A stretch of DNA of 64,000 nucleotides from Rebecca billardiae RCC1528 (Eukaryota; Protista; Haptophyta). The notes beneath the pieces were generated by a model. It was not told the DNA's origin. It did no database searches and saw only the letters and a list, made by a program, of their open reading frames with translations. The stretch lies in NCBI GenBank assembly GCA_965240325.2, contig OZ251222.1, positions 1,550,001 to 1,614,000 of the forward strand. Direction: 5' to 3'. The position numbers and the translations under genes were made by a program. Every line of letters begins with the position of its first letter. Positions within the stretch are counted from its first letter, which is position 1. This document shows positions 5,119 to 49,366 of the stretch, in pieces.

Positions 5119-8100
5119 ATGGCCTTCGCCAACGCGAGTTCGGCACGTGCTGAGGAGGTGACCGAGCCCACTCCTGACGGAACGGCTGAGCTCCTGCGCC
5201 GCCCATCGCGCGACGAGCCTGGGCGCCTCCTCTTCCCCATCGCGTCCCTCTTCTTCTTCCACCGCGTGCTGCTGCCGAGCGTGCTGCTTGGCGGCGATGA
5301 CCCGCTCGGCTGCGTCCTTCTCGTCGCGTGCGTCTGCCTGCTCGGGTGCGAGGTGGGCGCACTGGCGCGAGGCATGCGCGCACAGGGCACGTGCACGTCG
5401 CTCAGCATGCCCTCCTTCTTCGGCGGCCCACAGGTACGGCGGTGCCACCGGCACCGAGCTGCTGGCTCGTGCCCGCGAGCGCCCGCGCGCGGCGAGCGTG
5501 CTCGCCTGAGCGTGAGGCCGTTGCGGCGGCGGCGGCGCGACGAGCCCCGCCCTCCTCGGGGCGCGCCCCGAAGCGGGCCAACCCTGGCGACCCCGTGACC
5601 CCGCGCCTCCCGGCGCGCGCCCGCCCACCGCCTCGCAGCACGAGCGACGCGTGCGCGGAGGACTCGCTGCGGGCACAGCGTGCTCTCCGTCGTCTTCCTC
5701 TTCTTCGACTGCTGCCGGCGGACGTACCGGCGCCTACACGTCGGCTGCATCGCTCGCCGCTCGCCGTGGCGTGCGGTGCCCGGCCCTCGTGCTCGCGATG
5801 ATCATGGCTTTGGCGCCGGCGGCGACCGCGCAGACCTCACTGCGCACTCAGCTCATCACAGATTACCCCGAGTGCTTCCCCGGGGGCAGCTTTGACGCCG
5901 ACTACTGCTCCAACAACGTCACCGGCTCCATGTGCGCGCGCGTGTGGCGCGGCTCCGCGTCCCTGCGCGTGCGCGCACCGCGCGGTGACGCGCGGTGAGC
6001 ACCCCGTGCGCGCCTGACTTGCACGGCCGCCTGCGCCGGCAACACGCACGCCCGCGGCGACGCGCAGCATCTACGGCGCTGTGGGCGGCACGGTGCCGAC
6101 GGAGCTCGGGAACTTCCACTCGCTCGGCTCACTGTAAGCCGGCGCTGCGCATGCGCCCCGCGCGCCATCTGCGGCGTGCGCGCTTCCGCTGGCCCTCGCT
6201 CGCCGATCCATGCCGCGCCCACGCTCCCTCACCGCGCCCGCGCGCTCGCACCGCAGCACTCTGCTCGGCAACGCCCACTCGGGCACCGTCCCGACCGAGC
6301 TCGGCACGATGTCGGCGCTCGAATCTCTGTGCGTGCGTGCAGCTCACATCGCGTAGGGCTGGCGTGCCACGCGTGGTGGCGCGATCGCACCCTCACTGAG
6401 CCGGTGCCCACCGCCGGCGCGCGCGCGCGCGCGCGCGCAGGCGCCTCGAGGACAACAACTTGGTCGGCACCGTCCCGTCCGAGCTGGGCTCGCTGACGCG
6501 CTTGGACGAAAACCTGTGCGCCGCCACCCCGCGCCTTCCCCGCAGCGGCGCACCAGTCAGCGGCTGACCCGTCGCACCCGGCCCGCATGCCGTTGCTCTT
6601 TCGGCCGGCCCGACAACCCTCCCACCTGGCAGCTCCTTCCAGGGCAACTCGCTCACCGGCACGATGCCGACGCACCTCGGCCAGCTCACGAGCGTGTACC
6701 TGTTGTGCGTGGCGCGCGTGGCTCGCCCTGCGTACCGTGCTCTTCGCTCGCAGCGTGCGGCACGTGCGGCCGCTCACCGGCGCCATCGCGGCACCTCGAC
6801 GCGCGCTCCCACGCCGCGCCAGCAAATTCGACGACAACTCTTTGACCGGAACCATCCCGACCGAGTTTGGGCGGCTGGCGAATGCGTATGGCCTGTACGC
6901 GCAGCCGAGCACGCCGTGCCGCGCGCCGCGCGCCTTCGCCGCGAACATCTGCTCATGCCCGGACGTCTGCGCGCGTGCTGCTGCTCACGGCTTAGGACCC
7001 TCGACGGCAACATGCTGACTCAGACCATCCCGAGCGAGCTGGGGCAGCTGGACTCGAGCTTGCACGAGCTGTGAGCGCAGCCGACGCGCTGCGCGCCCAC
7101 GCTGCGCGCGCCCACGCTGCGCGCTGCGCGCTGCGCGCTGCGCCTCGCCGGGAGCACGCGCGCGTGCGCCGCGCGTCGCAGCCCACCCTCGGCCGCACCC
7201 CCGCCCGCCGCAGCTATTTGCACTCCAACTCTTTGGCGGGGTCGATCCCGACCCATCTCGGCCAGCTGTCCGTCCTGGATGACTTGTGCGCGCCAGAGGC
7301 GCCGCGCCCCGCGCGCGGCGGGCGACGCGCACGCAGCTCTCCTCTCACGCATGTACGTCCAACTGTGGCGCTTGCGCGCGCGCTGCTCGCTGCAGGTACC
7401 TGCATTCGAACAGTCTCGTCGGGCCCATCCCATCCGAGCTGGGTGAGCTCACCGCTGTCAAGTTGATGTGCGCGCGGCGCACGCGCAGGCCGGTGCACCG
7501 CGTGCGCGCGCGCGGCTGGCGGCCCTCTCACCAGCGTCGACGCTGCGTGCTGCCCGCTCGCGTGCCGCGTTGCGCAGGATCCTCTATGGCAACATGCTCA
7601 CTGGTGGCCTACCGGTGGCGCTGGGAACCGGCTTGACGAGCATGCGCGCGCTTCTCCTTCAATCCAACTCGCTCGTCGGCGCCATCCCGGCCTCGCTCGG
7701 TGCGTGCAGCTCCCTGACCTACCTCGGCCTGAACTTCAACTCGCTCACGGGCACGCTGCCGACCGAGCTGGCCGGCATGACAAAGCTGCAGACGTTGGAG
7801 ATGATGGGCAACTCGCTGGGCGGGAGCCTTCCGACGAGCCTCGGCGGCCTGACGCAGCTGCAGTACCTGTACCTCGCCGAGAACGCTCTCACTGGCTCGA
7901 TCCCGGCCGCACTCGGTGCCTTGACCGCGCTCATGCACCTGTGGCTGTACACCAACTCTCTGGTCGGCTCGCTGCCGACGGCGGTGGCCGACATCGGCTT
8001 GCTTCAGAGCGTGGATTTGCGTGGAAATGCGCTGACCGGCCCCATCCCCTCTGAGCTGGGCGGCGCCTTCGGCCTGACCCAACTCGCTCTCTACGACATG

Positions 8101-11100
8101 TCGCTGGCGGGCGCCATCCCCTCAGAGCTCGGCCTGTGCACTCGACTCGCGTTCCTGGACGTGTACGGCAACTCTTTCTCTGGCAGCCTGCCAACCGAAG
8201 TGGGCGCACTCACCGCCCTGGGCGACCTGGTCCTCAACGGCATGTCCTTGACCAGCACCCTCCCATCACAGCTCGGCGCGCTGACCCGGCTCACCGAGCT
8301 GGCCATCGATGGTAACGCGCTGAGCGGCACGATTCCAGCGTCGCTCGGCGGCTTGACGGCTCTCACACAGCTCGACCTCTACTCCAACTCGCTGGCGGGC
8401 GCTCTCCCCACCGAGCTGGGCGCGCTGACCCGCCTCTGGTATCTGCGCGTCGACCGCAACTCGCTGAGCGGCACGATTCCAGCGTCGCTCGGCGGCTTGA
8501 CGGCTCTCATACAGCTCGACCTCTACTCCAACTCGCTGGCGGGCGCTCTCCCCACCGAGCTGGGCGCGCTGACCCGCCTCTGGTATCTGCGCGTCGACCG
8601 CAACTCGCTGAACGGCACGGTCCCCTCGGAGCTTGGCGCGCTGACTGCACTCTCATCTCTGAAGGCGTTCACCAACGCGCTCACCGGCACGATGCCAACA
8701 TCGCTCGGCGGCTTGACGGCACTCACGGATCTGAGTGCTGCGAGCAACTCGCTGGCGGGCAGGCTCCCCACGGAGCTCGGCCATTGCACGCGCGCCTGGA
8801 GCATCGGCCTCGACTTCAACTCCCTCACTGGGCCAGTGCCCTCCGAGCTCGGCTCACTCACTGCTCTTGCCTTCCTCGACCTGAACGACATGTCGCTGAC
8901 TGGTGCCCTGCCGTCCGAGCTGGGCTCGCTGACTGTTCTCTCACGGCTGGCCGCGTCCGGCAACGCGCTGAACGGCACGCTGCCCGCTGCGCTCGGCAAT
9001 ATGTCGGCTCTCGAGACGCTCTGGTTGCACACGAACACGCTCAGCGGCACCGTGCCGTCGGCGCTCGGCCTCCTCACGAGCCTGGTGTACCTGGAGGCGC
9101 ACACGAACCAGCTGACCGGTGCCGTCCCGTCTGAGATCGGAGCGGCGACGAGCCTGGTCGAAATAGACCTGAGGGCCAACTCTTTGTCGGGCTCCCTTCC
9201 CTCAGCACTTGGCGCGCTGCAGAGCCTCACGACGCTCGACCTGCAGACCAATTCGCTGACGGGCAGCATGCCGTCCGAGCTCGGCACGATTGGAGTGCTG
9301 GCGAACCTGGCCCTCTTGGACAACTCGTTGAGCGGCACCATTCCGCCGCAGCTCTTCTCGCCCAGCCTGGAGACCCTGTACCTCGAGGGCAACTCGCTGA
9401 ACGGCAGCATTCCAACCGAGATCGGCAGTTCCACGCTCGTGCGCTTCTTGTACCTCGGCAGCAACAGCCTCACTGGCACCGTCCCGCACGAGCTTGCGCA
9501 GCTGACGCTGCTGCAGGTGGTGTCCGCCCGGCAGAACTCGCTGAGCGGCACCGTGCCGACAGAGCTCGGAGCTCTCACGCAGTTCCTCTTCCTGTACTTC
9601 GACGGGAACTCGCTGAGCAGCGCCATGCCGACGGAGCTGGGCGTGCTGACGAGCGCCCTGCAGATGACGTTTGCAGGGAACGAGCTCACTGGCACGATTC
9701 CATCCGAGCTTGGAGCGTGCACGCGCTTGACATCGATTGCCTTAGAGCTCAATTCGCTCAACGGCGCGTTCCCGACCGAGCTGCTGCAGCTGACTGCCTT
9801 GCCTGCCGGCGGCTTCACGTACGACGGCCGCACCGCCGCCAACGAGCTGACGTCGTGCTCGGACGGCGGCTGCGTATGCGCTGGCTCAGAGGCGTTCAAC
9901 ACGACCAACGGCGCTTTCAGCCCTGACATCATTGACCTCGTCGTGTGCCCATCTCCGCCGCCACCTCGCCCACCGGCGCCGCCGCCGAGTCCGCCGCCCT
10001 CGCCCCCGCCCTCGCCGCCGCCAAGCCCTCCGTCGCCGCCGCCGTCGCCTCCTGCCCCGCCCCCGTCGCCGCCGCCGCCGCCCTCGCCGCCGCCCTCGCC
10101 GCCGCCGCCCTCGCCGCCGCCCTCGCCGCCACCCTCGCCGCCGCCGCCGCCCTCGCCGCCGCCCTCGCCGCCGCCGCCCTCGCCGCCGCCCTCGCCGCCG
10201 CCGCCCTCGCCGCCGCCCTCGCCGCCGCCCTCGCCGCCACCGCCGAGCCCTCCGCCGAGCCCTCCGCCAGACCTGTCCAAGCTCAAGGCACAGATGCGTG
10301 CAGCGGTGACCGAGTGCTTCCCCGACACCGACGAATTCGACCCGGCCCTGTGCAGCGCGTACTACAACGCCACGCTCATCGACTTCTCGGGGAACGCGCT
10401 CTCTGGTCCGATCCCTACCGAAGTGGGCTATTTGACCTCGGCGCTAGGGCTGTGGCTCCACACCAACTCGCTGTCTGGCCCGGTGCCGACAGAGGTCGGC
10501 TTGCTGACTGGCATGCAGCTGCTCTACCTCCAAGACGCTGGGCTGACGGGGACGCTGCCGACAGAGCTCGCATATCTGACGAGCGTGACGTCCGTGCGTG
10601 TGGACGACAACGCGCTGAACGGCACCATTCCAGCCTGGCTGGGCAATGCCACCAGCCTTCGGACTGTCTACTTCCACAACAACCACATGACCGGCACGAT
10701 CCCGCCCGAGCTGGGGCGGTGCACCGAGATGGAGCTCATGTACTTGCACGGCAACCGGCTCACGGGGCAGGTCCCATCCGAGATCGGCGCGATGACAGGG
10801 CTCAGAGTGGTGTACGCCCACACCAACAGCCTGTCTGGCACGCTGCCCACCACGCTCGGCGCGCTCACCCGCATCGAGGAGCTCTTCTTTCACACGAACA
10901 AGCTCACCGGCGCCCTGCCCACTGAGCTGGGTGGCGCGACGAGCCTGACGTGGCTCGCCGCCCAGCAGAACTCGCTGGCTGGTCGCATCCCGTCCGAGCT
11001 CGGGATGACCGACATGTACGCGCTCTACCTCTGGACCAACGAGCTGACCAGCAGCATCCCGTCGGAGCTCTTCAGCATCCAGAGCCTGACGGCGCTGTAC

Positions 11101-14100
11101 GCGCAGGCCAACTCGCTGGTCGGCAGCATCCCCACCGTGATCGGAGTGGCCACGCGCATGCAGTACTTGTACCTCGACACCAACTCGCTCACCGGCACGC
11201 TTCCGACAGAGCTTGGCAGCCACACAGCGGCAGAAGCCCACTCATTTGCGAGGAACTCGCTGGTCGGCACGATCCCTTCTGAGATCGGGCTTGTGAGCCG
11301 GCTGCAGGTGCTGACCCTCTTTAGCAACATGCTCACCGGCACGCTCCCATCGCAGATTGGCACCCTCACAAGTGCTATCAGTGTGCAGATGCAGTCGAAC
11401 TCGGTGAGCGGAGCGCTGCCCACTGAGGTCCTGTTGCTCACCTCGTTGCTGGCGGGGCAGTTCGGGTACGACGGCCTCACGCCGAGCACGACTGCGAACT
11501 GCGTTGATGGTGGCTGCCTGTGCGCAGCCACCCCTTTCAGCTCCAACGGCGGCTTCACCCCTGACCCGGCCGACCTCGTCGCCTGCCCGTCGCCGCCCCC
11601 TTTGCCCCCGCCGAGCCCTCCGAGCCCACCCCCCAGCCCACCGCCCTCACCGTCACCACCATCGCCACCGTCCCTCCCGCCGAGCCCTCCGCCCCCGCCG
11701 GCGCCGCCGGCGCCGCCTCCCAGCCCACCGCCGCTGGCCGTTCCACCGTCGCCACCCTTTCCACCGCCCTCGCCGCCACCCACGCCGCCGCCCTCGCCTC
11801 CGCCGGCGCCAACGTTGCGCGCACAGATGCGCGCAGACTACCCCGAGTGCATCGAGGAGTCTGGCGCCTTCAACGTGGCGGCGTGCAGCAGCATCGGGGG
11901 CGGCGTCGACTACAGCAGCAGCGCGCTCTCGGGCACGGTCCCCACGGAGATCGGCTACATGTCATCGATGCTCGACTTTCGCGTGTTCACCAACGTGCTC
12001 ACGGGTCCGCTTCCGACCGAGGTCGGGTTGCTGCCCAACCTGCAGCTGCTCTACGCGCACGGCAACTCGCTGACAGGGAGCGTCCCATCGCACTTTGGTG
12101 CGGCGACGAGTCTGGTGGTTCTGTCCCTTGGCCCCAACTCGCTGAGCGGCACAGTGCCATCCGAGCTCGGGCAGCTCACGCGGCTGGGGCAGCTCTATCT
12201 CTACGCCAACACGCTGACGGGCACGGTGCCGTCCGAGCTGGGCGCGCTCACGAGCGTCTCCAACCTGTGGATGGAGTCGAACTCGCTGAGCGGGGCGATG
12301 CCGACCGAGGTGCTGCTGCTCACGTCGCTTGGGACGGGCACCTTCACGTACGACGGTCTCACCTCGGCCACGCAGGGCACGTCGTGCGCTGACGGCGGCT
12401 GCGTGTGCGCGGCATCGCCCTTCGCCAACAACACCGCGTTCTCGCCGGACCTCGCCGACCTGCTGACGTGCCCGTCGCCGCCGCCGACGCCGCCGCCTTC
12501 GCCGCCCCCGTCGCCGCCGCCGCCTCCCAACCCACCTCCACGCCCGCCGCCGAGCCCACCTCCGCCGAGCCCGCCAATGCCGCCGCCAAGCCCACCTCCC
12601 TCGCCGCCACCACCCGGCCCACCCTCGCCGCCGCCGTCGCCGCCGCCGAGTCCACCTCCACCGACAAGCCCTCCGCCCAGCTCGCCACCATCGCCTCCGC
12701 CGAGTCCACCGCCCCCACCGCCGTCTCCTCCGCCGGCGCCGACGCTGCGCGCACAGATGCGCGCAGACTACCCCGAGTGCATCGAGGAGTCTGGCGCCTT
12801 CAACGTGGCGGCGTGCAGCAGCATCGGGGGCGGCGTCGACTTCAGCAGCAGCGCGCTCTCGGGCACGGTCCCCACGGAGATCGGCTACATGTCATCGATG
12901 CTAGGCCTTTATGTGTTCACCAACGCGCTCACGGGTCCGCTTCCGACCGAGGTCGGGTTGCTGCCCAACCTGCAGCAGCTCTACGCGCACGGCAACTCGC
13001 TGACGGGGGCCGTCCCATCGCACTTTGGTGCGGCGACGAGTCTGGTGATTCTGTCCCTCGGCCCCAACTCGCTGAGCGGCACAGTGCCATCCGAGCTCGG
13101 GCAGCTCACGCGGCTGCAGGAGCTCTATCTCTACGCCAACGCGCTGACGGGCACGGTGCCGTCCGAGCTCGGCGCGCTCACGAGCGTCTCCAACCTGTGG
13201 ATGGAGTCGAACTCGCTGAGCGGGGCGATGCCGACCGAGGTGCTGCTGCTCACGTCGCTTGGGACGGGCACCTTCACGTACGACGGTCTCACCTCGGCCA
13301 CGCAGGGCACGTCGTGCGCTGACGGCGGCTGCGTGTGCGCGGCATCGCCCTTCGCCAGCAATGCAGGCTTTTCGCCGGACCTCGCCGACCTGCTGACGTG
13401 CCCGTCGCCGCCGCCGACGCCGCCGCCTTCGCCGCCCCCCACGCCGCAGCCACCCCCGTCGCCGCCGCCGCCTCCCACCCCACCTCCAAGCCCGCCGCCG
13501 AGCCCACCTCCGCCGACCCCGCCAATGCCGCCGCCAAGCCCACCTCCCTCGCCGCCACCACCCGGCCCACCCTCGCCGCCGCCCTCGCCGCCGCCGCCGC
13601 CCGCGCCGCCTCCATCCCCGCCGCCGAGCCCGCCGCCCCCCTCCCCTCCGCCGAGGCCTTCCCTGCGTGCTGTGCTGGCGTTCCTCTACCCCGAGTGCTT
13701 TGAGGAGACTGGCTCCTTCAACGAAGCCACGTGCAACGGCATTGGTCCGAGCATCGACTGGTCTGTCGCTTCGCTGACTGGCACGATCCCGACAGAGATT
13801 GGCTACATGGTCGCGCTCGACTCGATGCACATCTTCACCAACTCGCTCACCGGCACCATTCCGACCGAGATCGGAGCGCTCACAGCTCTGACCAATTTCT
13901 TCGTGAATGGAAATGATGTGATTGGTTCTCTCCCCACGGAGGTGCTACTGCTGACCTCGCTGGACCCAGGGGTTGGATTCTGGTACGACGGCATCACCGC
14001 AAGCAACCAGGGCACGGACTGCGCGGATGGCGGCTGCGTGTGCGCTGGCACAAGCTTTGCCAGCAAGGGCAACTTCATCCCAGACCCGGCTGATCTTCTG

Positions 14101-17100
14101 GCCTGCGGGTCGCCGATGCCACCTCCCTCGCCGCCGCCGCCATTGCCACCGCCATCGCCGCCACCCAAGCTGCCGCCGAGCCCGCCGCCAAGCCCGCCGC
14201 CGCCGATGCCGCCGCCGTCACCGCCGCCGCTGTTGCCACCGTCGCCGCCGCCGATGCCGCCGCCGTCGCCGCCGCCGTCGCTGCCGCCGTCGCCGCCGCC
14301 GATGCCGCCGCCGTCGCCGCCGCCGTCGCTGCCGCCGTCACCGCCGCCGATGCCGCCGCCGTCGCCGCCGCCGTCGCAGCCCCCGCTCCCGCCCCCAAGC
14401 CCGCCTCCGCCGCCAACGCCGCCGCCGTCGCCTCCGCCATCATCACCACCGTCCCCACCACCGGGGCCGAAGCCGCCGCCATCGCCGCCACCTACTCCGC
14501 CACCATCACCGCCACCGCCGCTGCCGAAGCCACCGCCGAGCCCACCGCCGCTGCCGCCAACGCCGCCGTCGCCACCGCCGTCCCCGCCACCATCGCCACC
14601 ACCAAGCCCACCACCTTCACCAAGCCCACCGCCGTCGCCACCGCCGTCCCCGCCACCGTCTCCACCACCAAGCCCACCACCTCCACCGAGCCCGCCGCCG
14701 TCACCGCCACCATCCCCGCCACCGTCTCCGCCGCCAAGCCCGCCACCCTCACCGCCGCAGCCACCGCCAAGTCCCCCGCCAAGTCCACCGCCGTCGTCAC
14801 CTCCGCCATCACCACCAGCGCCACCACCATCACCGCCGCCAAGCCCACCACCTCCACCGAGCCCACCTCCGTCACCACCACCGCCACTGCCTCCTCCCAG
14901 CCCACCACCGTCACCACCACCTTCGCCGCCGCCGGCGCCTCCTCCCAGCCCACCACCGTCACCACCACCTTCGCCGCCGCCGCCGGCACCACCTCCTCCA
15001 CCGTCGCCGACCCCATCACCGCCGCCCTCGCCGCCACCGCCCTCGCCGCCGCCGTGGGTGTCGCGTGGCGGTCCGGCGACGCCGTACAACGACACGATCG
15101 AGTACAACAGCGCGCAGAGCGACTTCCAGTCCGACCAGGCGGGCAACACGTTCGACGTGAGCATCGACCTGCTGAGCGGCGACGACACGCTGGTCGTGGG
15201 CTCGGCGGGCGACTCGTCAGCGGGCAACGGCGCGGGCGAGTCCGTGGTCGGCACGATCCTCGGCAGCGAGGGCACCGACGTGATCACCGTCGGCGGCGCC
15301 GGCGACGGCCTGAACCAACCGACGAGCGTGGGCGGCTCGATCGAGCTCACGGTCGACGGCGGCGACGGCGCGGACACGATCACGGTGGGCGGCGCGGGCA
15401 AGGGCGCGTCCAGCTCCGGCGCGCTCGGCGGCTCGAGCAACGTGACGGTGTTCGGAGGCGCCGGCAACGACACGATCAGCGTGGGCGGCGCGGGCCGTGG
15501 CGACTACGGACCCAACACCGGCGGTGACGCGAGCGTGTGGATCGACGGCGGCGACGGCGGCGACACGATCGTCGTGGGCGGCGGTGGCGTCGGCGCGAGG
15601 AGTGGATTTGGCGGCGACATCACCGTGCACGTCGACTCCGGCGCTGGCGACGACTATCTGAGCTTGGGCGGCGGTGGGTTTGGCTACTGGAGCGGCACTG
15701 GCGGCTCGGCCGAGCTGTACGTGAACGCGGGCGAGGGCGACAACACCGTGCTCGTGCCCACCGTGGGCGGTGAGGCGAAGGGCGGTGGCAAGGGCGGCGA
15801 TGGGAGCTTGCACGTGCTCGCCGGCGGCGGCGCGGACACGGTGCAGGTCGGCGGTGGCGGAGAGGGCTACATCGGTGGCCAGTTCGGAGGCGACGCCACC
15901 GTGTACGTGTCCACTGGCGGCGGGGACGATGACATCTCCGTCGGCGGGAGCGGCATGGCCCAATATGGCTCAAAGGGCGGCGGCTTGACCGCCGTGGTGG
16001 ACGCTGGTGACGGTGACAACTCGATCACGATCGGGGGCTCGGGCGGTGCCCTCAGCAGCGCTGAGTCCGGCGCATCGAACGTTGCTGTGACGGCGGGCGA
16101 CGGCGACGACGTGATCGTCGCGGGTGGCGTGGGCTACGCGACTAGTGGCGCCAAGTCAGGCGACTTCACACTTGCGGTCGACGCCGGAGGCGGGAACAAC
16201 GACATCGAGGTGGGCTCAGCGGGCGGCGGCCTAAACGCTCTCCCCGGCTCGCTCGAGGCGACGATCAGCACCCTCGGCGGGAACGACACGATCGTCGTCG
16301 GCGGCGGCGGGTACGGCTATGGCGCCACGGACGCAGGCGACGTTGTCGTGAACGTGTTTGCGGGCGACGGAGACGACAGCGTGGCGATTGGCGGCGGCGG
16401 CGACGCCTCTGCTTCTTCCGCGTGGGGAGGCAGCGTGTACGCGAATGTGAGCGCGACCGGCGGCGATAACGTCGTCGCCATCGGCGACAGCGGGAACGGC
16501 GTAAGCAGCGGCACTGGTGGCCACGTGGACGCTCGGGTCGAGCTCGGCGACGGCGCGGACGTCGTGACCATCGGCGGAGCCACCCCACAGTCTGGCCTCG
16601 GGAGAGGCGGCGATGTGACGTCGTACGTCCGTTCGGGCGGCGGCGCGGACGTCGTGACCATCGGCGACGCGGGCGATGCGGACACTGCCAGTTGGTACAC
16701 TACCAGCTTTAGTCAGGGTGGCAACACGCGCGCGTTCGTGTTTGCGGGCGAGGGCGACGACCGCGTGTACGCGGGCGACGCGGGCGACACGCTGGCTTCG
16801 ATGTTGAACTTCGGCGGCCATGCGTACGCGAACGTGCACGGCGGCGCGGGTGACGACGTTCTGCGCGGCGGCAACGGCGGCGACGCTGTCGCTGGCTCGG
16901 GCGAGGGCGGCGACGCGCTGATCAAGCTGTATGGCGACGACGGCGACGACCGGCTGTACGGCGGCGACGACGGCCTTGCCCTGGAGATGGGCGCCGACCC
17001 GGGCGAGGCGACGACGCACCTGCTCGGCGGCGGCGGCAACGACTACATCCGCGGCGGCACCGGGTACAACTACGCGGCCGGTGCGCGCGTGCGCCCCGCG

Positions 17101-29100: not shown

Positions 29101-32100
29101 GCCGACCCGACCGGCGGCATCAGCGGCGGCACCGCTGTGAGCAAGCTCTACGGCGACGCCGGCGACGACGTGATCACCGGCGGCGCGGCCGGCGGTGCCG
29201 ACCCGGGCGCGGTGACCACGTACATCTACGGTGTGCGCCGCGCGTGCAGCGGCGTGTCGCGGCACCGCCACGGCCAACGCTGAGCGCGCTTCGAGTGTGC
29301 GCGCGCGTGTGCCTGCCCCCGCGCGCGCCACAGGCGGCACCGGCGAAGACACGATCTACGCAGGCGAAGGCCGCGCCATCATCAGGGGTGCGTGGCCGCT
29401 GGCGCGTGCCGCGCGCTCTGCCAGTGCGCCGCAGCGCAGGTTGTGTCGCTGAGCGCCCTCGGCGCCGCTCGCGCGTCGCGACCGCGCGCACAGGCGGTCC
29501 GGGCGTGGACACGATCTACACGCGCGACAACGGCTTTGTGGACACGCTGTACGTCGAGTGGACGGACTCGTGGGACGTGGACCCGTTCGACATCGTGATC
29601 ACGCCACCCGCGCCGCCGCCCTCGCCGCCGCCGCCCTCGCCGCCACCACCACCATCACCGCCGCCACCATCGCCGCCGCCGTCGCCGCCGCCACCTCCGT
29701 CTCCGCCGCCATCGCCGCCGCCGCCGAGCCCACCGCCATCGCCACCCCCCTCGCCACCGCCGTCACCGCCGCCCTCGCCACCGCCATCGCCTCCGCCACC
29801 GCCACCGCCATCGCCTCCGCCTTCACCGCCGCCATCAACGCCACCGGTGCCGCCTCCATCCCCACCGCCATCGCCGCCGCCATCTCCTCCGCCATCGCCG
29901 CCGCCATCGCCACCTCCGCCAAGCCCACCGCCATCGCCACCTCCCTCGCCTCCGCCGTCACCGCCGCCATCACCGCCGCCATCACCGCCGCCCTCGCCAC
30001 CGCCTTCGCCACCTCCGCCGAGCCCACCGCCATCGCCACCTCCCTCGCCTCCGCCGTCACCGCCGCCCTCGCCACCGCCATCGGCGCCGCCCTCACCACC
30101 GCCATCGCCCCCGCCATCGCCACCGCCATCACCGCCGCCCTCGCCACCGCCACCGCCTCCGCCTTCACCGCCGCCATCGCCGCCACCGCTGCCGCCTCCA
30201 TCACCACCGCCATCCCCGCCGCCATCGCCTCCGCCCTCGCCGCCGCCCTCGCCACCGCCACCGAGCCCACCGCCTTCGCCACCGCCATCACCACCGCCAT
30301 CGCCTCCGCCCTCGCCGCCCCCACCCAGCCCGCCCCCGCCCCCGCCGCCCTCGCCGCCACCATCGCCGCCGCCCTCGCCGCCGCCGAGCCCACCGCCGCC
30401 GCCGCCGCCATTGCCACCGCCATCACCACCGCCATCACCTCCGCCCTCGCCGCCCCCACCCAGCCTGCCTCCGCCCCCGCCGCCCTCGCCGCCACCATCG
30501 CCGCCGCCCTCGCCGCCGCCGAGCCCACCGCCGCTGCCACCGCCATCGCCACCGCCATCGCCACCACCATCGCCTCCGCCTTCACCGCCGCCGCCACCGC
30601 CGTCGCCACCGCCATCGCCACCGCCATCGCCGCCGCCGTCGCCGCCCCCGCCCAGCCCGCCACCGCCACCGCCACCGTCGCCGCCGCCATCGCCGCCGCC
30701 ATCGCCGCCGCCGAGCCCACCGCCGCCGCCACCGCCATCGCCTCCGCCATCGCCGCCGCCATCGCCGCCGCCATCGCCGCCCCCGCCCAGCCCGCCTCCG
30801 CCCCCGCCGCCATCGCCGCCGCCATCGCCGCCGCCATCGCCGCCGCCGAGCCCTCCGCCGCTGCCACCGCCATCGCCACCGCCATCGCCACCGCCATCGC
30901 CTCCGCCTTCACCGCCGCCGCCACCGCCGTCGCCGCCGCCATCGCCGCCGCCATCGCCGCCGCCATCGCCGCCCCCGCCCAGCCCGCCCCCGCCCCCGCC
31001 GCCCTCGCCGCCACCATCGCCGCCGCCATCGCCACCGCCGAGCCCTCCGCCGCTGCCACCGCCATCGCCACCGCCATCGCCTCCGCCATCGCCTCCGCCA
31101 TCGCCGCCCCCACCCAGCCCGCCCCCGCCCCCGCCACCCTCGCCGCCGCCATCGCCGCCACCATCGCCTCCGCCAAGCCCACCACCGCCGCCACCGCCAT
31201 CGCCACCGCCATCGCCTCCGCCCTCGCCGCCCCCACCCAGCCCGCCACCGCCGCCGCCGCCGTCGCCGCCGCCTTCACCGCCACCATCGCCGCCCCCGCC
31301 GAGCCCACCGCCCTCTCCGCCGCCCTCACCGCCACCTAGTCCGCCGCCACCGAGTCCCCCACCCAGCCCGCCACCCACGCCGCCGCCGTTCCCACCTCCT
31401 AGCCCGCCTCCACCGAGCCCGCCGCCATCTCCACCGCCGGCGCCGCCGCCCTCGCCGCCGCCCAGCCCGCCACCACCGAGCGCACCACCGAGCCCACCCC
31501 CGTTGCCGCCACCAGCCCCCCCACCATCGCCTCCACCATCGCCCCCGCCGTCGCCAATGCCTCCACCGTTCCCCGCGGGCCGACCGCGCCCACCGCCTTC
31601 GCCGCCACCCACGCCTCCGCCCAGCCCGCCTCCGCCCAGCCCACCGCCGTCGCCACCGCCACCATCCTTCCCTCCCAGCCCTCCGCCAAGCCCACCACCG
31701 GTCGTCGGGTGCGCGGACCCGGGTGCGCTCAACTACAACTCGCTCGCGCGCGAGTGCAACCAGCGCACGTGCTGCCAGTACCCCATCTTCGGCTGCCTCG
31801 ACCCGAACGCCACCAACTTCCGCTCGGACGCGACCTCGCAGCCCGCGGACGTCGAGTGCCTGTACACGTATCCGGGCTGCACGGACAGCTGGGCGGCGGA
31901 CTACGACTCGACCGCGACCGTGTACAACGGCTGCGCGCCGTACACGCTCGGCTGCACAGACCCCACGGCGAGGAACTTCGACTCGATCGCGGACACGGAC
32001 GACGGCACGTGCGTGTACGACGTGCTCGGCTGCACCATCTCGACCGCGTGCGACTTCGACCCGAGCGCGACCGTGTTCACCGCGTGCGACACAACGAGCT

Positions 32101-35100
32101 GCCGCGGCTGCACCGACCCGTCGGCCGGCAACTACGACTCGAACGCGACGCGCGACGACGGGGGCTGCGTCTACCTGGGGTGCACGAGCCCCTCCGCAAC
32201 CAACTACGACTCGACGGCGACGCGCTTCAGCTCGTGCGTGTTCGCGCGCGTGGGCTGCACGGACACGCGCGCGTTCAACTACGACCCCGCCGCGAGCGTG
32301 GACTCTGGCGAGTGCGTCATCTTCGGGTGCAACGTGCCCTCCGCGCTGAACTACGACGTGGACGCGACGGCGAACGACGGGAACTGCACCTTTGCGGTGC
32401 GCGGCTGCCTCGACTCGAGCGCGCTCAACTTCCGCTCGGACGCCGAGGTCGAGAGCTTTGGGTGCGAGTACGCCATCCTCGGCTGCACGTCCTCGCTCGC
32501 GGCCAACTACAACCCGAACGCCACCGTGTACGACGGCAGCTGCCAGTTCACCGAGAAGAAGTGCGGCAACGAGGACGCGCTCAACTACGACTCGCGCGCC
32601 GCGGCCGGTCAGATCGACCCGAGCGTGTGCGTGATGCCCGCGCCCGGCTGCCGCAACCCCGCCGCCGTCAACTACGACTCGACGGCCAACGTACAGCCTG
32701 CCGGCGCAGCTTACCGCTGCGTGCTGCCGCGCGTCGGCTGCACCGACCCAGGCGCCGTGAACTACGACTCGCGCGCGACCGTCGAGGCCGTGCCGAGCAC
32801 GTGCGTCGTCGCGCTCGAGGGCTGCACCGACCCGAGCGCGCTCAACTACGACTCGAGCGCGAACACGCTGCGCGCGGGCTCGTGCGTGCGCGCCGTCGTC
32901 GGCTGCGTCGACAGCAGCGCGCTCAACTTCCGGAGCGACGCCAACGTGGGCTCGGCCGACTGCATCTATCCGCGGCTCGGCTGCATGTCGTCGCGCGCGA
33001 TCAACTACGACTCGCTCGCGACGGTGAGGGACGGCAGCTGCATCTTTGTGGTCGACGGCTGCACCGACTCTGCCGCGCTCAACTTCAACCCGGCCGCGAC
33101 GGCTGACGACGGCAGCTGCACGCTGCCTGTGCCGGGCTGCATGTCGACGAGGGCGATCAACTACAACTCGCTCGCGACCGTCGACGACCGCACGTGCGTC
33201 TTCCCGGTGGTGGGCTGCACCGACTCGAGGGCGCTCAACTACCGCCCCGCCGCGACGGTGGACTCTGGCGGCTGCATCGCCGCGCGCCGCGGCTGCACCT
33301 CGCGCAACGCGCTCAACTACGCGCCGACTGCCAACGTGGACGACGGCAGCTGCGTCGCCAAGGTGTTCGGGTGCACCAAGACGGCCGCGACGAACTACAA
33401 CTCGGCTGCCAACGTCGAGTCCAGCCCGAGCACGTGCCTCGTCGAGGGGTGCACCGACCCCAACGCGCGCAACTTCAACGCGCGCGCCACGGTCAACGAC
33501 GGCTCGTGCGTCGCCAAGCTGCGCGGCTGCTCGGACCCGCAGGCGGTGAACTACATCCCGGGCGCCGAGCTGTACGCGCGGTGCGACTACAAGGGGTGCA
33601 CGCGCACGGACGCGCTCAACTACGACGCGCGCGCCAACATCGCGAGCCCGACCGACTGCAGGTTCGCCTCGGCGAGCGGCGTCGTGCAGGTGGTCGCGCA
33701 GCACCGCTCGTGCGCCGTGCAGGCGGTGCGCGCCGACGGCGTCGTCGTCGGCTCCGGCACGACGCTCCAGTCCGGCGTGTTCGCGATGCTGTACTCGGAC
33801 GCGTTCGAGACGCTGCGCGTGCGCCCGTCGGCGCAGTGCCGCGACACGATCAACGGCGCGGCGCTCCGCTTCACCTTGCTCGCGCCCTTCGGCTCGCAGG
33901 TCGTGTCTCCGCTCACGACGATGTACATGCGCATGCTCGAGCGCGGGCTGAGCGAGGAGGGCGCGCAGCTCAACCTGTGGCGCTGCTTCGACGTGTACCC
34001 GCTGATCGACATCACGACGTACCGGCCGATCAAGCAGTACCTCGACGGCGACCCGAACGCGCTGCACGCCGTGCGCGCGTCCGTGCTGATCAGCGAGCTC
34101 CTCAACCGGCTGCTCGCGCTGCTCGCTCCGTACGTGCAGCTCGCGGCGGACGTCGAGCGGAGCGCGAGCGCGGCGCTGATCGACCGCTGCCTCGCGGCGC
34201 CGGACGACCTGGTGGCGCCGGTGCTCGCGAACGCGACAGCGGCGCTCGAGCTCGCGCTCGCCGTGCGCGACGGCGCGGGCCTCACGCCCGGCACCGGGCC
34301 CAACGCCGGCGCCATGCTCGACATGGCTCAGGCGCTCGTGTCGCGCGTGCAGGAGCTCGCCACCATCTGGGACGGCCCCGGCTACTTTGAGCTGCCGCCG
34401 GAGTCGGCGGCGGCATCGGCGGCGGCAGCGCGGCGCGCGGCGGCCGTGGCCTCGTCCGCCCTTCTCCGCGCGCCGCAGGTCTCGGCGGCCTCGACCGAGT
34501 GCTTCTCGAGCGCGCTGCAGGAGACGTACCAGGCGTCGGCGTGCCCCGTCGCCGGCTGCACCGACGACGAGGCGCAGAACTTCGCGCCCGACGCGACGGT
34601 GAGCGACGACAGCTGCGAGTACACGGGCTGCACCAACATCAACGCGACCAACTACGTGCCGCGCGCGACGATCGACGACGGCAGCTGCGTCGTCGAGGTG
34701 ATCGGCTGCCGCGACCCGCTCGCGACCAACTACAACGCCAACGCGACGTCGCAGGGGAGCGCGGCGTGCGACTACACCGTGCTCGGCTGCACGCTCTCGT
34801 CCGCGGCCAACTTCGTGCCCGAGGCGACGAAGAACGACGGCTCGTGCACGTTCGTCGCGCTCGGTTGCATCGACCCGACCGCGCTCAACTACGACCCGAC
34901 CGCCAACCGCGACGACGGCACGTGCGTCGCGCCGGCGCGCGGCTGCACCGACTCCCGTGCGGACAACTACGACCCGAGCGCCGCGCTCGACGACGGCTCG
35001 TGCGTGCTCGGCGGCTGCCGCAACTCGCTCGCAGACAACTACAACTCGGCCGCCACGATCAATGACGGCAGCTGCAGCTTTGGCGTGAGCGGCTGCGTCG

Positions 35101-38100
35101 ACTCGCGCGCCGACAACTACAACTCGGACGCCGCCGTCGACGACGGCTCGTGCGTGCTCCGCGGCTGCACGATCGAGGGCGCCGACAACTACGACTCTGC
35201 CGCCACCGCCAACGACGGCAGCTGCACCGGCGCCCTCCCCGGATGCACGAGCCCCGCCGCGGAGAACTACGAGTCGTTTGCCACCGTCGACGATGGCACG
35301 TGCACGATCAGCGGGTGCACGCTCACGTCGGCGCTCAACTACGACAGCACGGCCAACGCCAACGACGGCAGCTGCGTGTACCCGCGCCTCGGCTGCGCCG
35401 ACCCGGCCGCGCTCAACTTCCTGTCCACCGCCGACACGGACGACGGCTCGTGCCAGTACTTAGGCTGCCGCTCGTCGCTCGCGAGCAACTACGACTCGAG
35501 CGCCACCATCAGCGACGCGGCGTCGTGCGTGTTCCCGATCGCCGGCTGCACCGACTCGACCGCCGAGAACTACGACCCGCTCGCGCAGATCGACGACGGC
35601 GCGTGCACCATCACCGGCTGCCTGGATCCGCTCGCGAGCAACTACAACTCGCGCGCGACGGTCGACTCGGGCGACTGCGTCGAGCTCGCCGTCGTCGGCT
35701 GCCTCGACCCCGCCGCCGACAACTTCAACTCGCTCGCCGAGGCGAACGGCAACTGCGCCTACTTCGGCTGCCAGAACCCGCTCGCCTTCAACTACGACTC
35801 GACGGCGAACGCGCCGGACGGCGCGTGCGTGCTGCCCGCGCTCGGCTGCACGGACGAGACGGCGCAGAACTACGACTCTGGGGCCACCGTCGACGACGGC
35901 AGCTGCTCCTTCCCCGGCTGCACCTCGGCCGAGTGCGTCGGGTACGACCCGACGGCTACGATCGACGACGGCAGCTGCGTGTGCGCGGTGCTTGGGTGCA
36001 CCGATCCGCTCGCGGCCAACTTCGACTCGGCGGCGGAGGCGGACGACGGCAGCTGCGTCCGCGCGGGCTGCGTCGACGTCGCCGCGGCCAACTTCGACTC
36101 GCGCGCGACCCTGGACGACGGCAGCTGTCTGCCCGAGGTCGTCGGCTGCTCCGTGCTCAGCGCATCGAACTACGACTCGAGCGTGACGCAGCTCGACTTT
36201 GGCACGTGCATCTTCACCGGCTGCCTCAGCCCGCTCGCCTCCAACTTCGACTCGACGGCCAACACGCCGGACGACTCGTGCGTCTTCCCGACTGCGGGGT
36301 GCATGGACTCGCGCGCGGTCAACTTCCGCTCCGCGGCGACGGTCGACTCCGGCAACTGCCAGTTCGTCGGCTGCACCGACTCCACGGCGTCGAATTACGA
36401 CCCGACGGCGACCGTGCGCGACGCATGCGACTTCAACTTCCCCGGCTGCACCGACTCGCTCGCGGACAACTTCGACTCACTCGCCACCGTCGACGACGGG
36501 CGGTGCGCGCGCGGCGGGTGCACGGCCGTCGGCGCTCGCAACTACGATCCGCTGGCTACGTACAACGACGGCACGTGCGACTTCTTCGCGCCGCCGCCGT
36601 TCCCGCCCTCGCCGCCGAGCCAGCCGCCGAGCAGCCCGCCGAGCCCACCGAGCAGCCCGCCGCCGCCGCCGCCGACCCCGCCGCCCTCGCCTGCGCCGCC
36701 GCCGAGACCACCTGTGCCGCCGACGCCGCCGCCGAATCCGCCGACGCCGCCGAGCCCGCCCCCGAGCCCAGGGCCGCCGCCACCGCCGCCGGGGCAACCG
36801 CCCCCGCAGCCACCGCCATCGGCGCCAGCGTCGCCACCGCCCCGCCCGCAGCTCATCCTCGGGGCAGGCACCGATGTGTCGTACGCCGGCGAGGTGCGCG
36901 GCCGCGCGCTCCGTCCCCGCTGCCCAGACGCGATCTCTCGAGTGTCCATGCAGCGCACTGCGCGAGGCTCGCGCGAGCTGACGCCGCCCCCTCCGCCCCC
37001 CGGCCTGTACAGGTGAGCATGGTCGCCGCGATGGCCCTCTGCTGCTGCTGCATCCTTTCCGCCATCCTCATCCTCTGCCTCCGCCGCCGGAAGGTGCGAT
37101 GCTCGCCCGTCGCCGCAGCGCCGCAGCGCCGCGCCGCAGCCCGGCCCGCGCGAGTGCGTTCCAGCGTGCGCAGAGCGCTGACGTGCGTCCCCGTGTGCGC
37201 GCATGCGCGGCCCTCTGCGCGCGCGCGCGCGCTCTCCCGTGGATGGCTCGCTCCCTCCGCACGTCGCAGAACAAGCAGCGCGACGGGGAGGCCGAGGCGG
37301 AGCGCGAGCGCGCGCGTGAGCTCGAGGAGCAGCGCGCGCGCGAGGCGGAGGAGCAGCGGCGGCGGGAGGAGGAGGCGCGGCGGGCACGGGAGCTGGAGGA
37401 GCAGCAGGCGGCGGAGCAGGCGCGGCAGGCGCGCCCGTCACGCCCGTCCAACCTGCTCGAGTCGCTGGAGGCCTCGATTGCGGGCACGATGGCCGCGCTC
37501 GCCGGCGGCTCGCCCGTTCGCGCCGCGCGCCGCTCGGCAACGCAGGCTGCTGAGCAGCGGCAGGCGCTCGAGCAAGCAGAGCAGGCGCGGGAGGCGCGCC
37601 CGTCGCGCCCCTCGTCGCAGCTCGCGCAGGTCTCGGTCGCGGGTGCACTGGCCGCGCTCCCCGCAGGCAGCCCTGCTCGCAGCCCGACGCATCGCCCGGC
37701 GCCTCGCCCGGCGCCCCGCAGCCCGCCGCCCCGCAGCCAGCCGGGCGCACAAGCCGAGGCTGCAGAACAGCGGCAGGCGCGCCCGTCGCGCCCCTCGTCG
37801 CAGCTCGCGCAGGTCTCGGTCGCAGGCACACTGGCCATGCTCCCCGGAGGCAGCCCTGCGCGCAGCCCACGAGGCAGCGCGCCGCCCCGCAGCCCGCCGC
37901 CTCGCAGCCAGCTGGGCGCACAAGCCGAGGCCGCGGAGCGGCGGCAGCCGCGCTCGTCGCGCCCCTCGTCGCAGCTCGCGCAGGTCTCGGTCGCGGGCGC
38001 ACTGGCCACGCCCCCCGGAAGCAGCCCTGCTCGCAGCCCACGAGGCAGCCCGCCGCCTCGCAGCCCGCCGCTTCGCAGCCAGCTGGGCGCACAAGCCCAG

Positions 38101-38370
38101 GCTGCTCCGCAGCAGCCGGCGCGCGCGCAAGCAGAGCAGGAGCCGCAAGCACCTCCGTCGCGTCCTGTGTCCCTGCTCGAGTCTGTGCAGATCGGGATAG
38201 CTGGCACGATCGCCTCGCTCACCGGCCGCAGCACGCCCACTCCACCGGCGGACACGAGCAGCGCGGTTGGAGCCTCCGGTGGCGCCCAGGCGACGACCGG
38301 CACGCAGTACCGCCAACCATACGCCAGCGGCGACGCGGCAGGCCGCCAAGGGGCGGAGGAGCGCGTGTGA
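5119..38370 (+). CDS. Giant (~9,800-10,000 aa) single-pass cell-surface protein: LRR blocks, Ser-Pro(n) linkers, RTX-like Gly/Asp modules, Cys-rich GCTD repeats, TM, cytoplasmic tail
   Basis: Hand-spliced with GT..AG introns that keep the frame. Optional exon 5119-5433 joins 5639 in frame; alternative start ATG 5798 (MIMALAPAATAQ). Exon ends 5931; micro-exons 6068-6133, 6257-6328, 6441-6515, 6633-6704, 6823-6894, 6996-7070, 7214-7285, 7396-7467; exon 7578-17080; five repeats of a three-intron unit (first: exons 17215-17478, 17592-17645, then 17749 onward); exons 29494-36893, 37013-37093 (TM VSMVAAMALCCCCILSAILILCL-RRRK) and 37270-38370 (stop). Confidence 0.8.
5830..14110 (+). repeat. Five capped plant-type LRR blocks (LxxLxLxxNxLxGxxPxELG, 24 aa) separated by SPPP linkers
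   Basis: Each block opens with L(R/K)..(Y/T)(P)EC....F....C and closes with PTE.L.LT.L..G.F.YDG.T..C.DGGC.CA. Blocks at ~5830-9950, 10270-11590, 11810-12475, 12740-13400 and 13660-14110; blocks 3 and 4 are near-identical. Confidence 0.92.
15055..29605 (+). repeat. Five tandem ~2.8-kb RTX-like (GxGxD) modules, each including three introns
   Basis: Units start with WVSRGGPATPYND at 15055, 17904, 21164, 24006 and 26821 and end WDVDPFDIVITP. Internal ~32-aa repeats of the form VxxGxGDDxIxVGxxG. Confidence 0.95.
29605..31700 (+). repeat. ~700-residue Ser-Pro(3-6) extensin-like tract
   Basis: Continuous CCN/TCN/AGC codons translating as (SPPP)n. Confidence 0.95.
31700..36590 (+). repeat. About 50 Cys-rich GCTDPxAxNYDxxAxxDDGSC repeats in two arrays around a unique ~300-aa domain (~33660-34550)
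   Basis: Repeat consensus is visible throughout the translation of 29244..37016; the count is approximate. Confidence 0.92.
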
Positions 38371-38614
38371 TGATTGCGTCGCGTGGCCGTCAGTCACGCC
38401 ACAGCTAGCTTTGCCACTTATTTGGCCCGCGCCCCCGCCTATGTAGCAGCAGTCGTCTCACGGCAGTTTATTCGTCTTAACATGACAGTCATCATCGTCG
38501 TCAGCACATCATATTGATGCCTGCGATTGCGCGCGCCTGCTGATGCTGATCACCTGATGACGACACTGCCGAGCCTCTCGTCCTCACTGCCAAGTGCCAG
38601 ACTCACGGTGGCAC

Positions 38615-43121: not shown

Positions 43122-43619
43122 CTCACCCACGAGAAGATGTCGGGCGAGAAGATGCGTCGAATGATCAGCAATCCACACCCCGCCCGAGACAGGGCTGGTC
43201 GTGAACCAGCACGATCCTCACCCACCAGTGGCACTGCGGTACAAGACGAAGACGACGAAGATTCGTCGTCAAAAAGTGGCGGCTAATCGGGATGAGATCC
43301 CAGGTAAACTCACGTCGTAATGGATCACTTCACGGGATCCTCCCTGATCAACAGGTGATATGGACCCTGTTCATGAGCGAGTACAGTTTTTCATATTGAA
43401 TAATTGAGCCACGCGGAGCTCGTCAACCAGCAGCTTACTACTCTTATAAGCTCAACTACCGCAGATCGCATCTCGTTCATTCGTACTTAGTCTCAAAGGC
43501 GGGTACTGTATGATAGAAACCACAGCCAACCGTCGTCGTCAGTCAAGTCGTCAGCCCAGCCGGAACAATTGTTTGCCGCCCTTCAGAACAAGGGCGCAAG
43601 GTCAACTGTTCAAAGAGCT

Positions 43620-44795: not shown

Positions 44796-44945
44796 GCCGT
44801 GGAGAGGCAGCGTCCGGAATATGAGAAATCCCGGACTGTGTCACGGACGGTCGGCAATCGACGCAAAATAATCTCCAACCTTCTACACCTTCCCGCTCGC
44901 CAAGCGGGCGTGTTACGCGCATCCGCACGTGGCAGCGGTGACGCG
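44796..44945. promoter_or_regulatory. Putative bidirectional promoter (glutaminyl cyclase / Fpg)
   Basis: 150 bp between divergent start codons, locally AT-richer. Confidence 0.55.
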
Positions 44946-47827: not shown

Positions 47828-48290
47828 GATCATGATATCATTATACGACTACAGCTAGTAAGTCACTACGGCTGGCACAGTGTAGCACTGGCTGCCGTAG
47901 CGCCCGTCAGCGGAACACGTACGTATGATACGCTGCGTGTGTCCGCCGGTATGTTATATTCTCATCAATTCTGGGCATTCATCACTTTTGACAGTGGCGC
48001 GTCACCCGTGACCGTGTCCGTGTCTCCGATGAGTCCGACTCCGCGCACGGGTGCCAGCAGTAGTGAGTAGGCTCACGGTCACGGGCCCGCGCATACCTTG
48101 TCTGCGCCACTAGCATGCCCGATGGCCGATGGCATCGCCGGCCGCCAATGCGCCACTGATCGACTCAGACTGCATGAGAGCTGCTGCTGATCTCACTGCG
48201 GACGACGTTGTCGACGGTGACGGGTGAGCGTTCCGGAATCCGGGCAGGGCCGTGACCCGTGAGGCGTGACTGGCGCCCACACGCGCCTCG

Positions 48291-49148: not shown

Positions 49149-49366
49149 GTGAAGCCTCACAACGTGTCCGCGCCCGCAGCGATAGGTCACGCGCCGCTCT
49201 CGCCCCCCGGCCACCAGAAGATCTTGATCGCCGGCACCCGGGAGATCGCTTCCGCTGCGCGCAGCTTCGTCAACGATGAATGCTGATGTGAAAACTGATG
49301 AAAACTGAAAAGATCGCGTCAAAAGAACGGCCTCCGGCCGTCGTCGCGTCGGTGTCGGCCGTGAGC

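What the first reader, a model, noticed from the sequence alone, without database searches (positions are those of the whole stretch)
5119..38370. One ~33-kb gene encodes a ~10,000-aa surface protein combining LRR, extensin, RTX-like and Cys-repeat modules
Seen: the separate long ORFs in the track splice into one frame. My exon sum from ATG 5798 is about 29.5 kb (~9,800 codons), ending in a single TM, an RRRK stop-transfer and a 366-aa tail. Known: plant-type LRRs are recognition modules, SP(n) tracts are hydroxyproline-glycosylated rods, and GGxGxD repeats form Ca2+-binding beta-rolls in bacterial RTX adhesins. Inference: a giant adhesin or receptor projecting far from the cell, for prey, partner or pathogen recognition or as a scale/hair component. 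Automated annotation would probably fragment it.
Basis: partly seen in the sequence, partly recalled or inferred. Interest (0 to 1): 0.85.

Follow-up and report, generated by a model that had tools for sequence, protein, structure and literature searches.

The report
Giant multi-headed algal surface protein gene
A GC-rich alga, probably a haptophyte, has one intact 27-exon gene for a 9,820-residue membrane protein that holds ten likely binding heads on stiff proline rods up to about half a micrometre from the cell, so it looks like a eukaryotic counterpart of giant bacterial adhesins, though no expression data were available.

Summary
Confirmed. From ATG 5798 to TGA 38370, 26 GT-AG introns join 27 exons into 29,463 nt and 9,820 residues with no internal stop. 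Order from the N-terminus: five capped plant-type LRR blocks; five ~815-aa beta-solenoids with one RTX-type turn per ~30-aa coil; about 52 'GCTD' cysteine repeats split by a bacterial-adhesin-type domain; one transmembrane helix; a ~370-aa tail. About 1,660 Ser-Pro residues (~0.5 micrometre if extended) space the modules. The membrane-proximal base (Ser-Pro, GCTD, central domain, GCTD, TM) recurs in at least 11 other proteins, one a Prymnesium MAG protein; this family has no Pfam or NCBIfam model. The solenoid copies keep their cores (dN/dS ~0.2) while their loops vary (~1.0): relaxed constraint, positive selection not shown. Best reading: a multivalent surface adhesin or recognition filament. 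It is not a true RTX protein, extensin, receptor kinase or MST3 homologue. The start codon is unsettled (5119 is an alternative). No reads or RNA could be laid, and the joined protein was not sent to any search. Earlier scan notes (unchecked) list similar giants and GCTD/RTX paralogues elsewhere in this genome.

The parts
5119..5433 (+). Possible alternative first exon (ATG 5119, 105 codons, two hydrophobic segments). It joins in frame through intron 5434-5638, or it belongs to a separate small gene.
   Evidence: Coding-like codon use in this frame; acceptor 5638 scores 11.0, like the true acceptors, donor 5434 only 3.5. Unresolved.
5798..38370 (+). Whole gene: 27 exons, 29,463-nt CDS, 9,820 aa, about 0.97 MDa before glycosylation
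5834..9948 (+). LRR block 1 (aa 13-1027): about 40 plant-type 24-aa LRRs with Cys caps; the first repeats lie one per micro-exon (nine phase-2 introns, 5932-7577)
9949..10269 (+). Ser-Pro rod 1 (107 aa)
10270..14106 (+). LRR blocks 2-5 (10270-11586, 11812-12471, 12742-13401, 13660-14106; about 15, 6, 6 and 3 repeats), separated by Ser-Pro rods of 75-90 aa. Blocks 3 and 4 are a recent duplicate (14 aa differences in 223).
14107..15054 (+). Ser-Pro rod of 316 aa
15055..17858 (+). RTX-like beta-solenoid unit 1 (aa 2730-3547, three introns); coil = strand, GxGxD/N turn, strand, variable loop
17904..20695 (+). Beta-solenoid unit 2 (96% aa identity to unit 1)
20696..21163 (+). Ser-Pro rod of 156 aa
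21164..23960 (+). Beta-solenoid unit 3 (83% to units 1-2, 93% to units 4-5)
24006..26775 (+). Beta-solenoid unit 4
26821..29603 (+). Beta-solenoid unit 5 (97% to unit 4)
29604..31700 (+). Longest Ser-Pro rod (699 aa, 77% Pro, 20% Ser)
31701..33674 (+). GCTD cysteine-repeat array 1 (about 25 repeats of 24-30 aa, two Cys each)
33675..34544 (+). Central domain (aa 8355-8644): transthyretin/CnaB-like beta-sandwich plus helical bundle with an SPLTT motif. Homologues lie in bacterial type I-secreted surface proteins. Dibasic site at 34431-34436, where relatives have RRRL.
34545..36587 (+). GCTD cysteine-repeat array 2 (about 27 repeats)
36588..36842 (+). Juxtamembrane proline-rich tract (85 aa)
37013..37093 (+). 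Exon for the single transmembrane helix (with a CCCC cluster) and the RRRK stop-transfer
37270..38370 (+). Last exon: 366-aa cytoplasmic tail; charged coiled-coil-like start, then 171-nt tandem repeats rich in Ser/Pro/Arg; no known domain

Best explanation
One gene encodes a ~1-MDa single-pass surface glycoprotein that works as a multivalent adhesin or recognition filament. Shown: the open frame, module order, single TM, and copy-to-copy variation. Inferred: it enters the ER, its Ser-Pro tracts are hydroxylated and glycosylated into stiff polyproline-II rods (~0.5 micrometre in all), and disulfide-closed GCTD repeats plus the central domain form a stalk at the membrane. Five beta-solenoids, probably stiffened by seawater Ca2+ at their Asp/Asn turns, and five LRR blocks are held in series away from the cell. 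LRR concave faces and solenoid loops, which differ between copies, bind glycans or proteins of bacteria, partner cells or surfaces, and avidity comes from many weak heads. The tail anchors the protein rather than signalling enzymatically. The gene grew from a conserved haptophyte GCTD base by adding and tandemly duplicating modules; gene conversion homogenised the unit ends.
For: Intact 9,820-aa frame with conserved intron positions and phases. Plant-type LRR consensus with 12-16 residue types at the concave-face positions, rich in Tyr, His and Asp. Solenoid model: pLDDT 61, pTM 0.68, two strands per ~30-aa coil. Among its top structural matches is the ice-binding solenoid of the Marinomonas RTX adhesin (3P4G, Z 17.1, rmsd 3.6, 26% identity); 8 of 10 Atlas rows carry PF00353 (best TM 0.57). 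The central domain has 22 homologues, mostly in large bacterial surface proteins, one named a type I secretion target. Its beta-sandwich matches CnaB, pilin and SdrD modules at Z 6-8.7. The same base with a TM occurs in P0003/P0026, P0047 (Prymnesium MAG), P0039, P0040 and others. Variation is concentrated in loops: 127/277 columns against 43/362 in the core, p=4e-22. The rise of 0.31 nm per residue and the glycosylation rule come from PMC11015965.
Against: No RNA, protein or read evidence (one search listed no run), and no matching product in public protein sets. Loop dN/dS is about 1.0 and not different from neutral, so variable loops need not be binding sites. The solenoid model is from a single sequence, with low-confidence loops; its top match is curli CsgA (Z 24.6, rmsd 8.7), and three-sided beta-helices score almost as well as 3P4G. 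Z 6-8.7 may reflect only a common fold. The signal peptide from ATG 5798 is short. No ligand is known.
Confidence: 0.5

Rival explanations
1. A structural coat, scale or hair component: the chain, perhaps cut near the central domain and shed, builds the cell covering or a flagellar hair. The solenoids and rods are mechanical parts that self-associate, and the loops drift.
For: Loop omega near 1 fits relaxed constraint. The best structural match is curli CsgA. MST3 is an 8,572-aa proline-rod hair core (PMC11015965). Most relatives carry an RRL-type basic motif after the central domain (9 of 11 by pattern, a tenth visible in the alignment).
Against: About 70 LRRs with varied concave faces are binding modules. 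There is no PKD-type anchor, and Ser-Pro runs reach only SP7. The window protein keeps only RR of that motif.
Confidence: 0.25
2. A sensing receptor (receptor-like protein): LRRs and solenoids detect microbial or partner ligands and signal through a co-receptor or the 370-aa tail.
For: Plant-type LRRs with one-repeat exons, one TM, and a Ser/Arg/Pro-rich tail with repeated RPS motifs.
Against: No kinase, TIR or other signalling domain and no YxxL/NPxY motif in the tail. Long rods between heads and membrane make allosteric coupling unlikely (inference).
Confidence: 0.12
3. Not one product: the region is two or more genes or alternative transcripts, is silent, or the copy number of the solenoid units is mis-assembled.
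For: No transcript or read evidence, no public product, unclear 5' end, and units with near-identical ends.
Against: No stop in 29.5 kb, no intergenic-like DNA inside, purifying selection on solenoid cores (omega ~0.2, p<1e-11). The longest exact repeat is 717 nt. The closest units differ by about 2%, against about 0.04% between this assembly and independent Logan contigs nearby, so they are unlikely to be alleles placed in tandem.
Confidence: 0.13

Closest known systems
Bacterial RTX adhesins (Marinomonas primoryensis MpAFP/MpIBP, Pseudomonas LapA, Aeromonas AhLap; PMC4083281, PMC12077191)
   Same: One giant chain that holds ligand-binding domains far from the cell; RTX-type turns in a beta-solenoid (fold match to the MpAFP region IV structure 3P4G); a central domain shared with bacterial type I-secreted proteins.
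   Different: Eukaryotic gene with introns. The anchor is a C-terminal TM helix, not an N-terminal retention domain; there is no type I secretion signal. Spacers are proline rods and GCTD repeats, not Ig-like extenders. Coils are ~30 aa with variable loops; no PF00353 hit.
Chlamydomonas mastigoneme core MST3 and algal hydroxyproline-rich glycoproteins (PMC11015965)
   Same: Giant (8,572 aa) membrane-anchored chain with long Ser/Pro rods and folded heads, poorly annotated.
   Different: No PKD2-like channel domain; the rod is split into 11 tracts, not 42 regular repeats; heads are LRR and RTX-like solenoids rather than C-type lectins.
Plant LRR receptor-like proteins and LRR-extensins (own knowledge)
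   Same: 24-aa plant-specific LRR consensus, one-LRR exons, LRR joined to Ser-Pro tracts, single TM.
   Different: About ten times longer, five separate LRR blocks, caps with no homologue found, no kinase, no Tyr cross-link motifs.
Unnamed haptophyte GCTD-repeat membrane proteins (P0003/P0026, P0047 Prymnesium sp. KAL3929928.1, P0035, P0038-P0040; related P0058 Chrysochromulina parva)
   Same: Ser-Pro tract, two GCTD arrays around the SPLTT domain, Ser-Pro tract, TM, low-complexity tail; their central domains form one side of a supported branch against bacterial copies (98/95).
   Different: Relatives are 1,500-2,800 aa as called and often carry FG-GAP domains; none seen has LRR blocks or solenoids. 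Several are probably incomplete at the N-terminus.

Membership tests
RTX proteins / RTX adhesins | Tandem GGxGxDxUx nonapeptides (Pfam PF00353) | tested here: not met
   50 canonical motifs, but one turn per 29-38-aa coil, not tandem; no Pfam or NCBIfam hit
RTX proteins / RTX adhesins | Parallel beta-roll or beta-solenoid fold | tested here: met
   AF2 model pLDDT 61, pTM 0.68; 3P4G Z 17.1; Atlas TM 0.57 to a PF00353 cluster. Moderate confidence.
RTX proteins / RTX adhesins | Export by type I secretion through a C-terminal signal, N-terminal retention domain | tested here: not met
   Spliced eukaryotic gene; C-terminus is a TM helix and a 370-aa tail
RTX proteins / RTX adhesins | Ca2+-dependent folding | not testable with these tools
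   Asp/Asn turns are present in every coil; binding needs an experiment
Plant LRR receptor kinases / receptor-like proteins | 24-aa plant-specific LRR with N-x-L-x-G-x-I/L/V-P | tested here: met
   65 motifs, 54 of 64 spacings exactly 24 aa; consensus; Pfam LRR hits
Plant LRR receptor kinases / receptor-like proteins | Single TM helix | tested here: met
   one peak of 2.83 at aa 9431
Plant LRR receptor kinases / receptor-like proteins | Cytoplasmic kinase domain (kinases) or plant LRRNT cap | tested here: not met
   no family in the tail; no LRRNT hit in any block
Extensins | Repeated Ser-Pro3-5 | tested here: met
   200 SP3, 41 SP4, 13 SP5
Extensins | Tyr/Lys cross-linking motifs in the rod | tested here: not met
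   no Tyr and 5 Lys in about 1,800 residues of proline tracts
Extensins | Proline hydroxylation and O-glycosylation | not testable with these tools
   inferred from PMC11015965 for a green alga; not shown for this lineage
MST3-type mastigoneme core | PKD2-like multi-pass membrane domain | tested here: not met
   one TM only, no PKD hit
MST3-type mastigoneme core | Regular P13/P11(XXP)3 repeats | tested here: not met
   Ser-Pro runs reach at most SP7; tracts are irregular
Unnamed haptophyte GCTD-SPLTT membrane family | Two GCTD arrays around the SPLTT central domain | tested here: met
Unnamed haptophyte GCTD-SPLTT membrane family | Flanking Ser-Pro tracts and C-terminal TM | tested here: met
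Unnamed haptophyte GCTD-SPLTT membrane family | RRL-type basic motif after the central domain | tested here: inconclusive
   one Arg is invariant in all 12 sequences, but the window has RR followed by Ala, not Leu

The most novel reading that the evidence does not exclude
Haptophytes took adhesin modules from bacteria (RTX-like solenoid, SPLTT domain, GCTD repeat) and rebuilt them into ER-exported, membrane-anchored giant adhesins. In these, an expanded RTX coil serves as a fixed scaffold for about 20 variable loops per unit under diversifying selection: a one-chain recognition repertoire for prey, symbionts or viruses.
Probability: 0.2. Interest if true: 0.85.

Novelty: new variant of a known kind. 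Interest (0 to 1): 0.62.

Why it matters
From my own knowledge, the proteins that make up the surface of haptophytes, and that let these mixotrophic algae bind bacteria, surfaces or each other, are poorly known; my paper searches found no description of this architecture, the GCTD repeat or the family (the library is limited). The gene gives a defined candidate and separable units to test. It points to an unmodelled haptophyte family built from bacterial-type modules, and to an expanded RTX coil that tolerates variable loops, a possible binding scaffold. It also shows that such giants can be missing from protein databases: no product covering the central domain was found among 1.84 billion representatives.

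Tried and rejected
The look-up of sequencing runs listed no run. Run ids seen later through the look-up of encoding contigs did not come from that tool and were not sent. No sequence homologue was found for the solenoid unit (one search gave only ordinary bacterial RTX proteins) or for the LRR C-cap. Pfam, NCBIfam and PDB sequence searches were blank for the GCTD arrays and the central domain. The structural hit of the central domain to the PgcA non-heme domain (Foldseek E 0.03; Z 7.1) is too weak to use. Positive selection on loops was not established: MG-model omega ~1.0, p 0.18-0.97; the GY tests were discarded because kappa was fixed. An ice-binding role was not pursued: the turns lack a regular Thr row. 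An RTX toxin reading was rejected: no toxin domain, TM-anchored. The species was not identified. The tree places the window row on a long branch and has no root, so no donor is claimed.

Full report
Observation. The window is about 72% GC eukaryotic DNA. I rebuilt the gene from the sequence. From ATG 5798, 26 GT-AG introns of 101-176 nt give 27 exons, 29,463 nt and 9,820 residues with a single stop at 38368-38370. The junctions were chosen by me, but they are constrained. The nine 5' introns are all phase 2 at the same LRR position; the three introns of the solenoid unit recur in phase 1 in all five copies, each before a GGxGxD-type turn; retaining any but one of the 26 breaks or shifts the frame. 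No intron resembles the AT-rich flanks.

The 5' end is open. ATG 5798 gives only 11 residues before a likely cleavage site. An exon from ATG 5119 to 5433 is coding-like and joins in frame through an acceptor at 5638 that scores like the true ones, adding 158 residues with two or three hydrophobic segments. But 5680-5780 reads best in another frame. A separate small gene or a one-base assembly error cannot be excluded.

Anatomy. Five LRR blocks with lineage-specific Cys caps occupy aa 13-2413: 65 clear repeats, nearly all 24 aa, of the plant-specific type, with highly variable concave-face positions. Five units of 810-818 aa follow. A single-sequence AF2 model shows a solenoid whose ~30-aa coil is strand, GxGxD/N turn, strand, loop (pLDDT 61, pTM 0.68). 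Its matches are curli CsgA (Z 24.6, rmsd 8.7), the ice-binding RTX solenoid 3P4G (Z 17.1, rmsd 3.6, 26% identity) and bacterial PF00353 clusters. Pfam gives no RTX hit and no sequence homologue was found. Eleven proline tracts total 1,659 residues, mainly SP3 and free of Tyr; at 0.31 nm per residue (PMC11015965) they would span about 0.5 micrometre. About 52 GCTD repeats flank a 290-aa central domain, then come one TM helix, RRRK and a low-complexity tail.

Relatives. The GCTD repeat is common: 3,549 hits, largely proteins with the Bacteroidota secretion-tail domain PF18962 or with FG-GAP domains, including Prymnesium and Chrysochromulina entries; Atlas neighbours are unnamed, partly haptophyte clusters. 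The central domain has 22 weak homologues (E 4e-9 to 1e-3), mostly large bacterial surface proteins, one named a type I secretion target. It folds well (pLDDT 79) into a transthyretin/CnaB-like sandwich plus helical bundle and has no family model. Eleven distinct proteins carry it between GCTD arrays, several with Ser-Pro tracts and a C-terminal TM. With the window row they form one side of a branch against 15 bacterial-type rows (98/95; unrooted, long branches). Most have an RRL-type motif after the domain, a possible processing site; the window keeps only RR. So the base is a conserved, unnamed haptophyte-type family, and this gene adds about 7,000 residues of heads and rods. The haptophyte assignment of the window rests on these relatives and on GC content (compare 73% in Diacronema lutheri, PMC8379373); the species was not identified.

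Evolution of the copies. Units 1/2 and 4/5 are 96-97% identical, the two groups 83%; the first ~170 and last ~190 residues and the introns are almost the same in all five. An intron insertion shared by units 3 and 5 but not 4 conflicts with the coding tree, as expected of gene conversion. Changes fall in loops (127/277 columns against 43/362, p=4e-22). Core omega is about 0.2; loop omega is about 1.0 overall and about 1.4 for units 3-5, not significantly above 1. Pairwise counts show a 2- to 5-fold excess of loop replacements over local silent change (units 4-5: 4.8-fold, p=0.001), but that count is biased upward where silent sites in multiply changed codons are left out. The fair reading is relaxed constraint, with selection possible at some sites.

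Artefact check. The longest exact repeat in the gene is 717 nt, each unit is distinct, and the closest pairs differ by about 2%, whereas independent Logan contigs of a nearby gene differ from the window by about 0.04%. This argues against alleles placed in tandem. No run was listed for read mapping, so neither copy number nor expression was tested directly.

Mechanism and verdict. The most likely function is a multivalent adhesin or recognition filament (0.5), ahead of a structural coat or hair part (0.25), a signalling receptor (0.12) and a split, silent or mis-assembled locus (0.13). It works like a bacterial RTX adhesin (PMC4083281, PMC12077191) built on an algal proline-rod plan, but fails the membership tests for RTX proteins, extensins, receptor kinases and MST3. 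Earlier notes of this scan report other giants and GCTD or RTX-like paralogues in the same genome; I did not check those loci. Class: new variant of a known kind; interest 0.62.

Noticed in passing
window 3-4055 (+): Intron-free frame of over 1,350 aa with AbiEii, Ham1-like and RNA ligase Pfam hits; already noted by the scan.
   Followed up: no
window 5119-5898 (+): Two coding-like, hydrophobic stretches (5119-5433 and 5680-5780) in one frame just upstream; either the true start of the giant gene, a small overlapping membrane-protein gene, or a sign of a one-base error near 5780.
   Followed up: partly
window 38560-43217 (-): CLC chloride channel gene (PF00654) ending tail-to-tail within about 200 nt of the giant gene's stop.
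   Followed up: no
window 43623-44840 (-), 43779-46271, 52896-54716 (-), 57288-59378 (+), 63044-64000 (+): Ordinary neighbours: glutamine cyclotransferase, Fpg glycosylase, phosphoglycerate kinase, an SRCR-domain protein and a CFA20-domain protein.
   Followed up: no
window 37706-38102 (+): The cytoplasmic tail holds 2.3 copies of a 171-nt (57-aa) repeat with RPS-rich motifs, possible phosphorylation or partner sites.
   Followed up: partly
window 8314-8619 (+): A near-perfect 144-nt (two-LRR) duplication inside LRR block 1 shows ongoing expansion.
   Followed up: no
L008 1-5375, L009, L010 (window 47804-53178): Logan contigs of runs ERR14847148, ERR14847150 and ERR14847151 match the window at 99.9% and are unspliced, so public DNA runs of this organism exist; they could name the species.
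   Followed up: partly
P0035, P0038, P0047, P0080 and others (alignment A1, after the central domain): An RRL-type basic motif is conserved in the haptophyte-type proteins and absent from the bacterial homologues: a candidate protease site gained in eukaryotes.
   Followed up: partly
L003 (LNFM01000134.1): A stop-free frame of at least 7,281 codons with RTX repeats runs through the whole 21.8-kb locus: a giant bacterial-type RTX protein.
   Followed up: no
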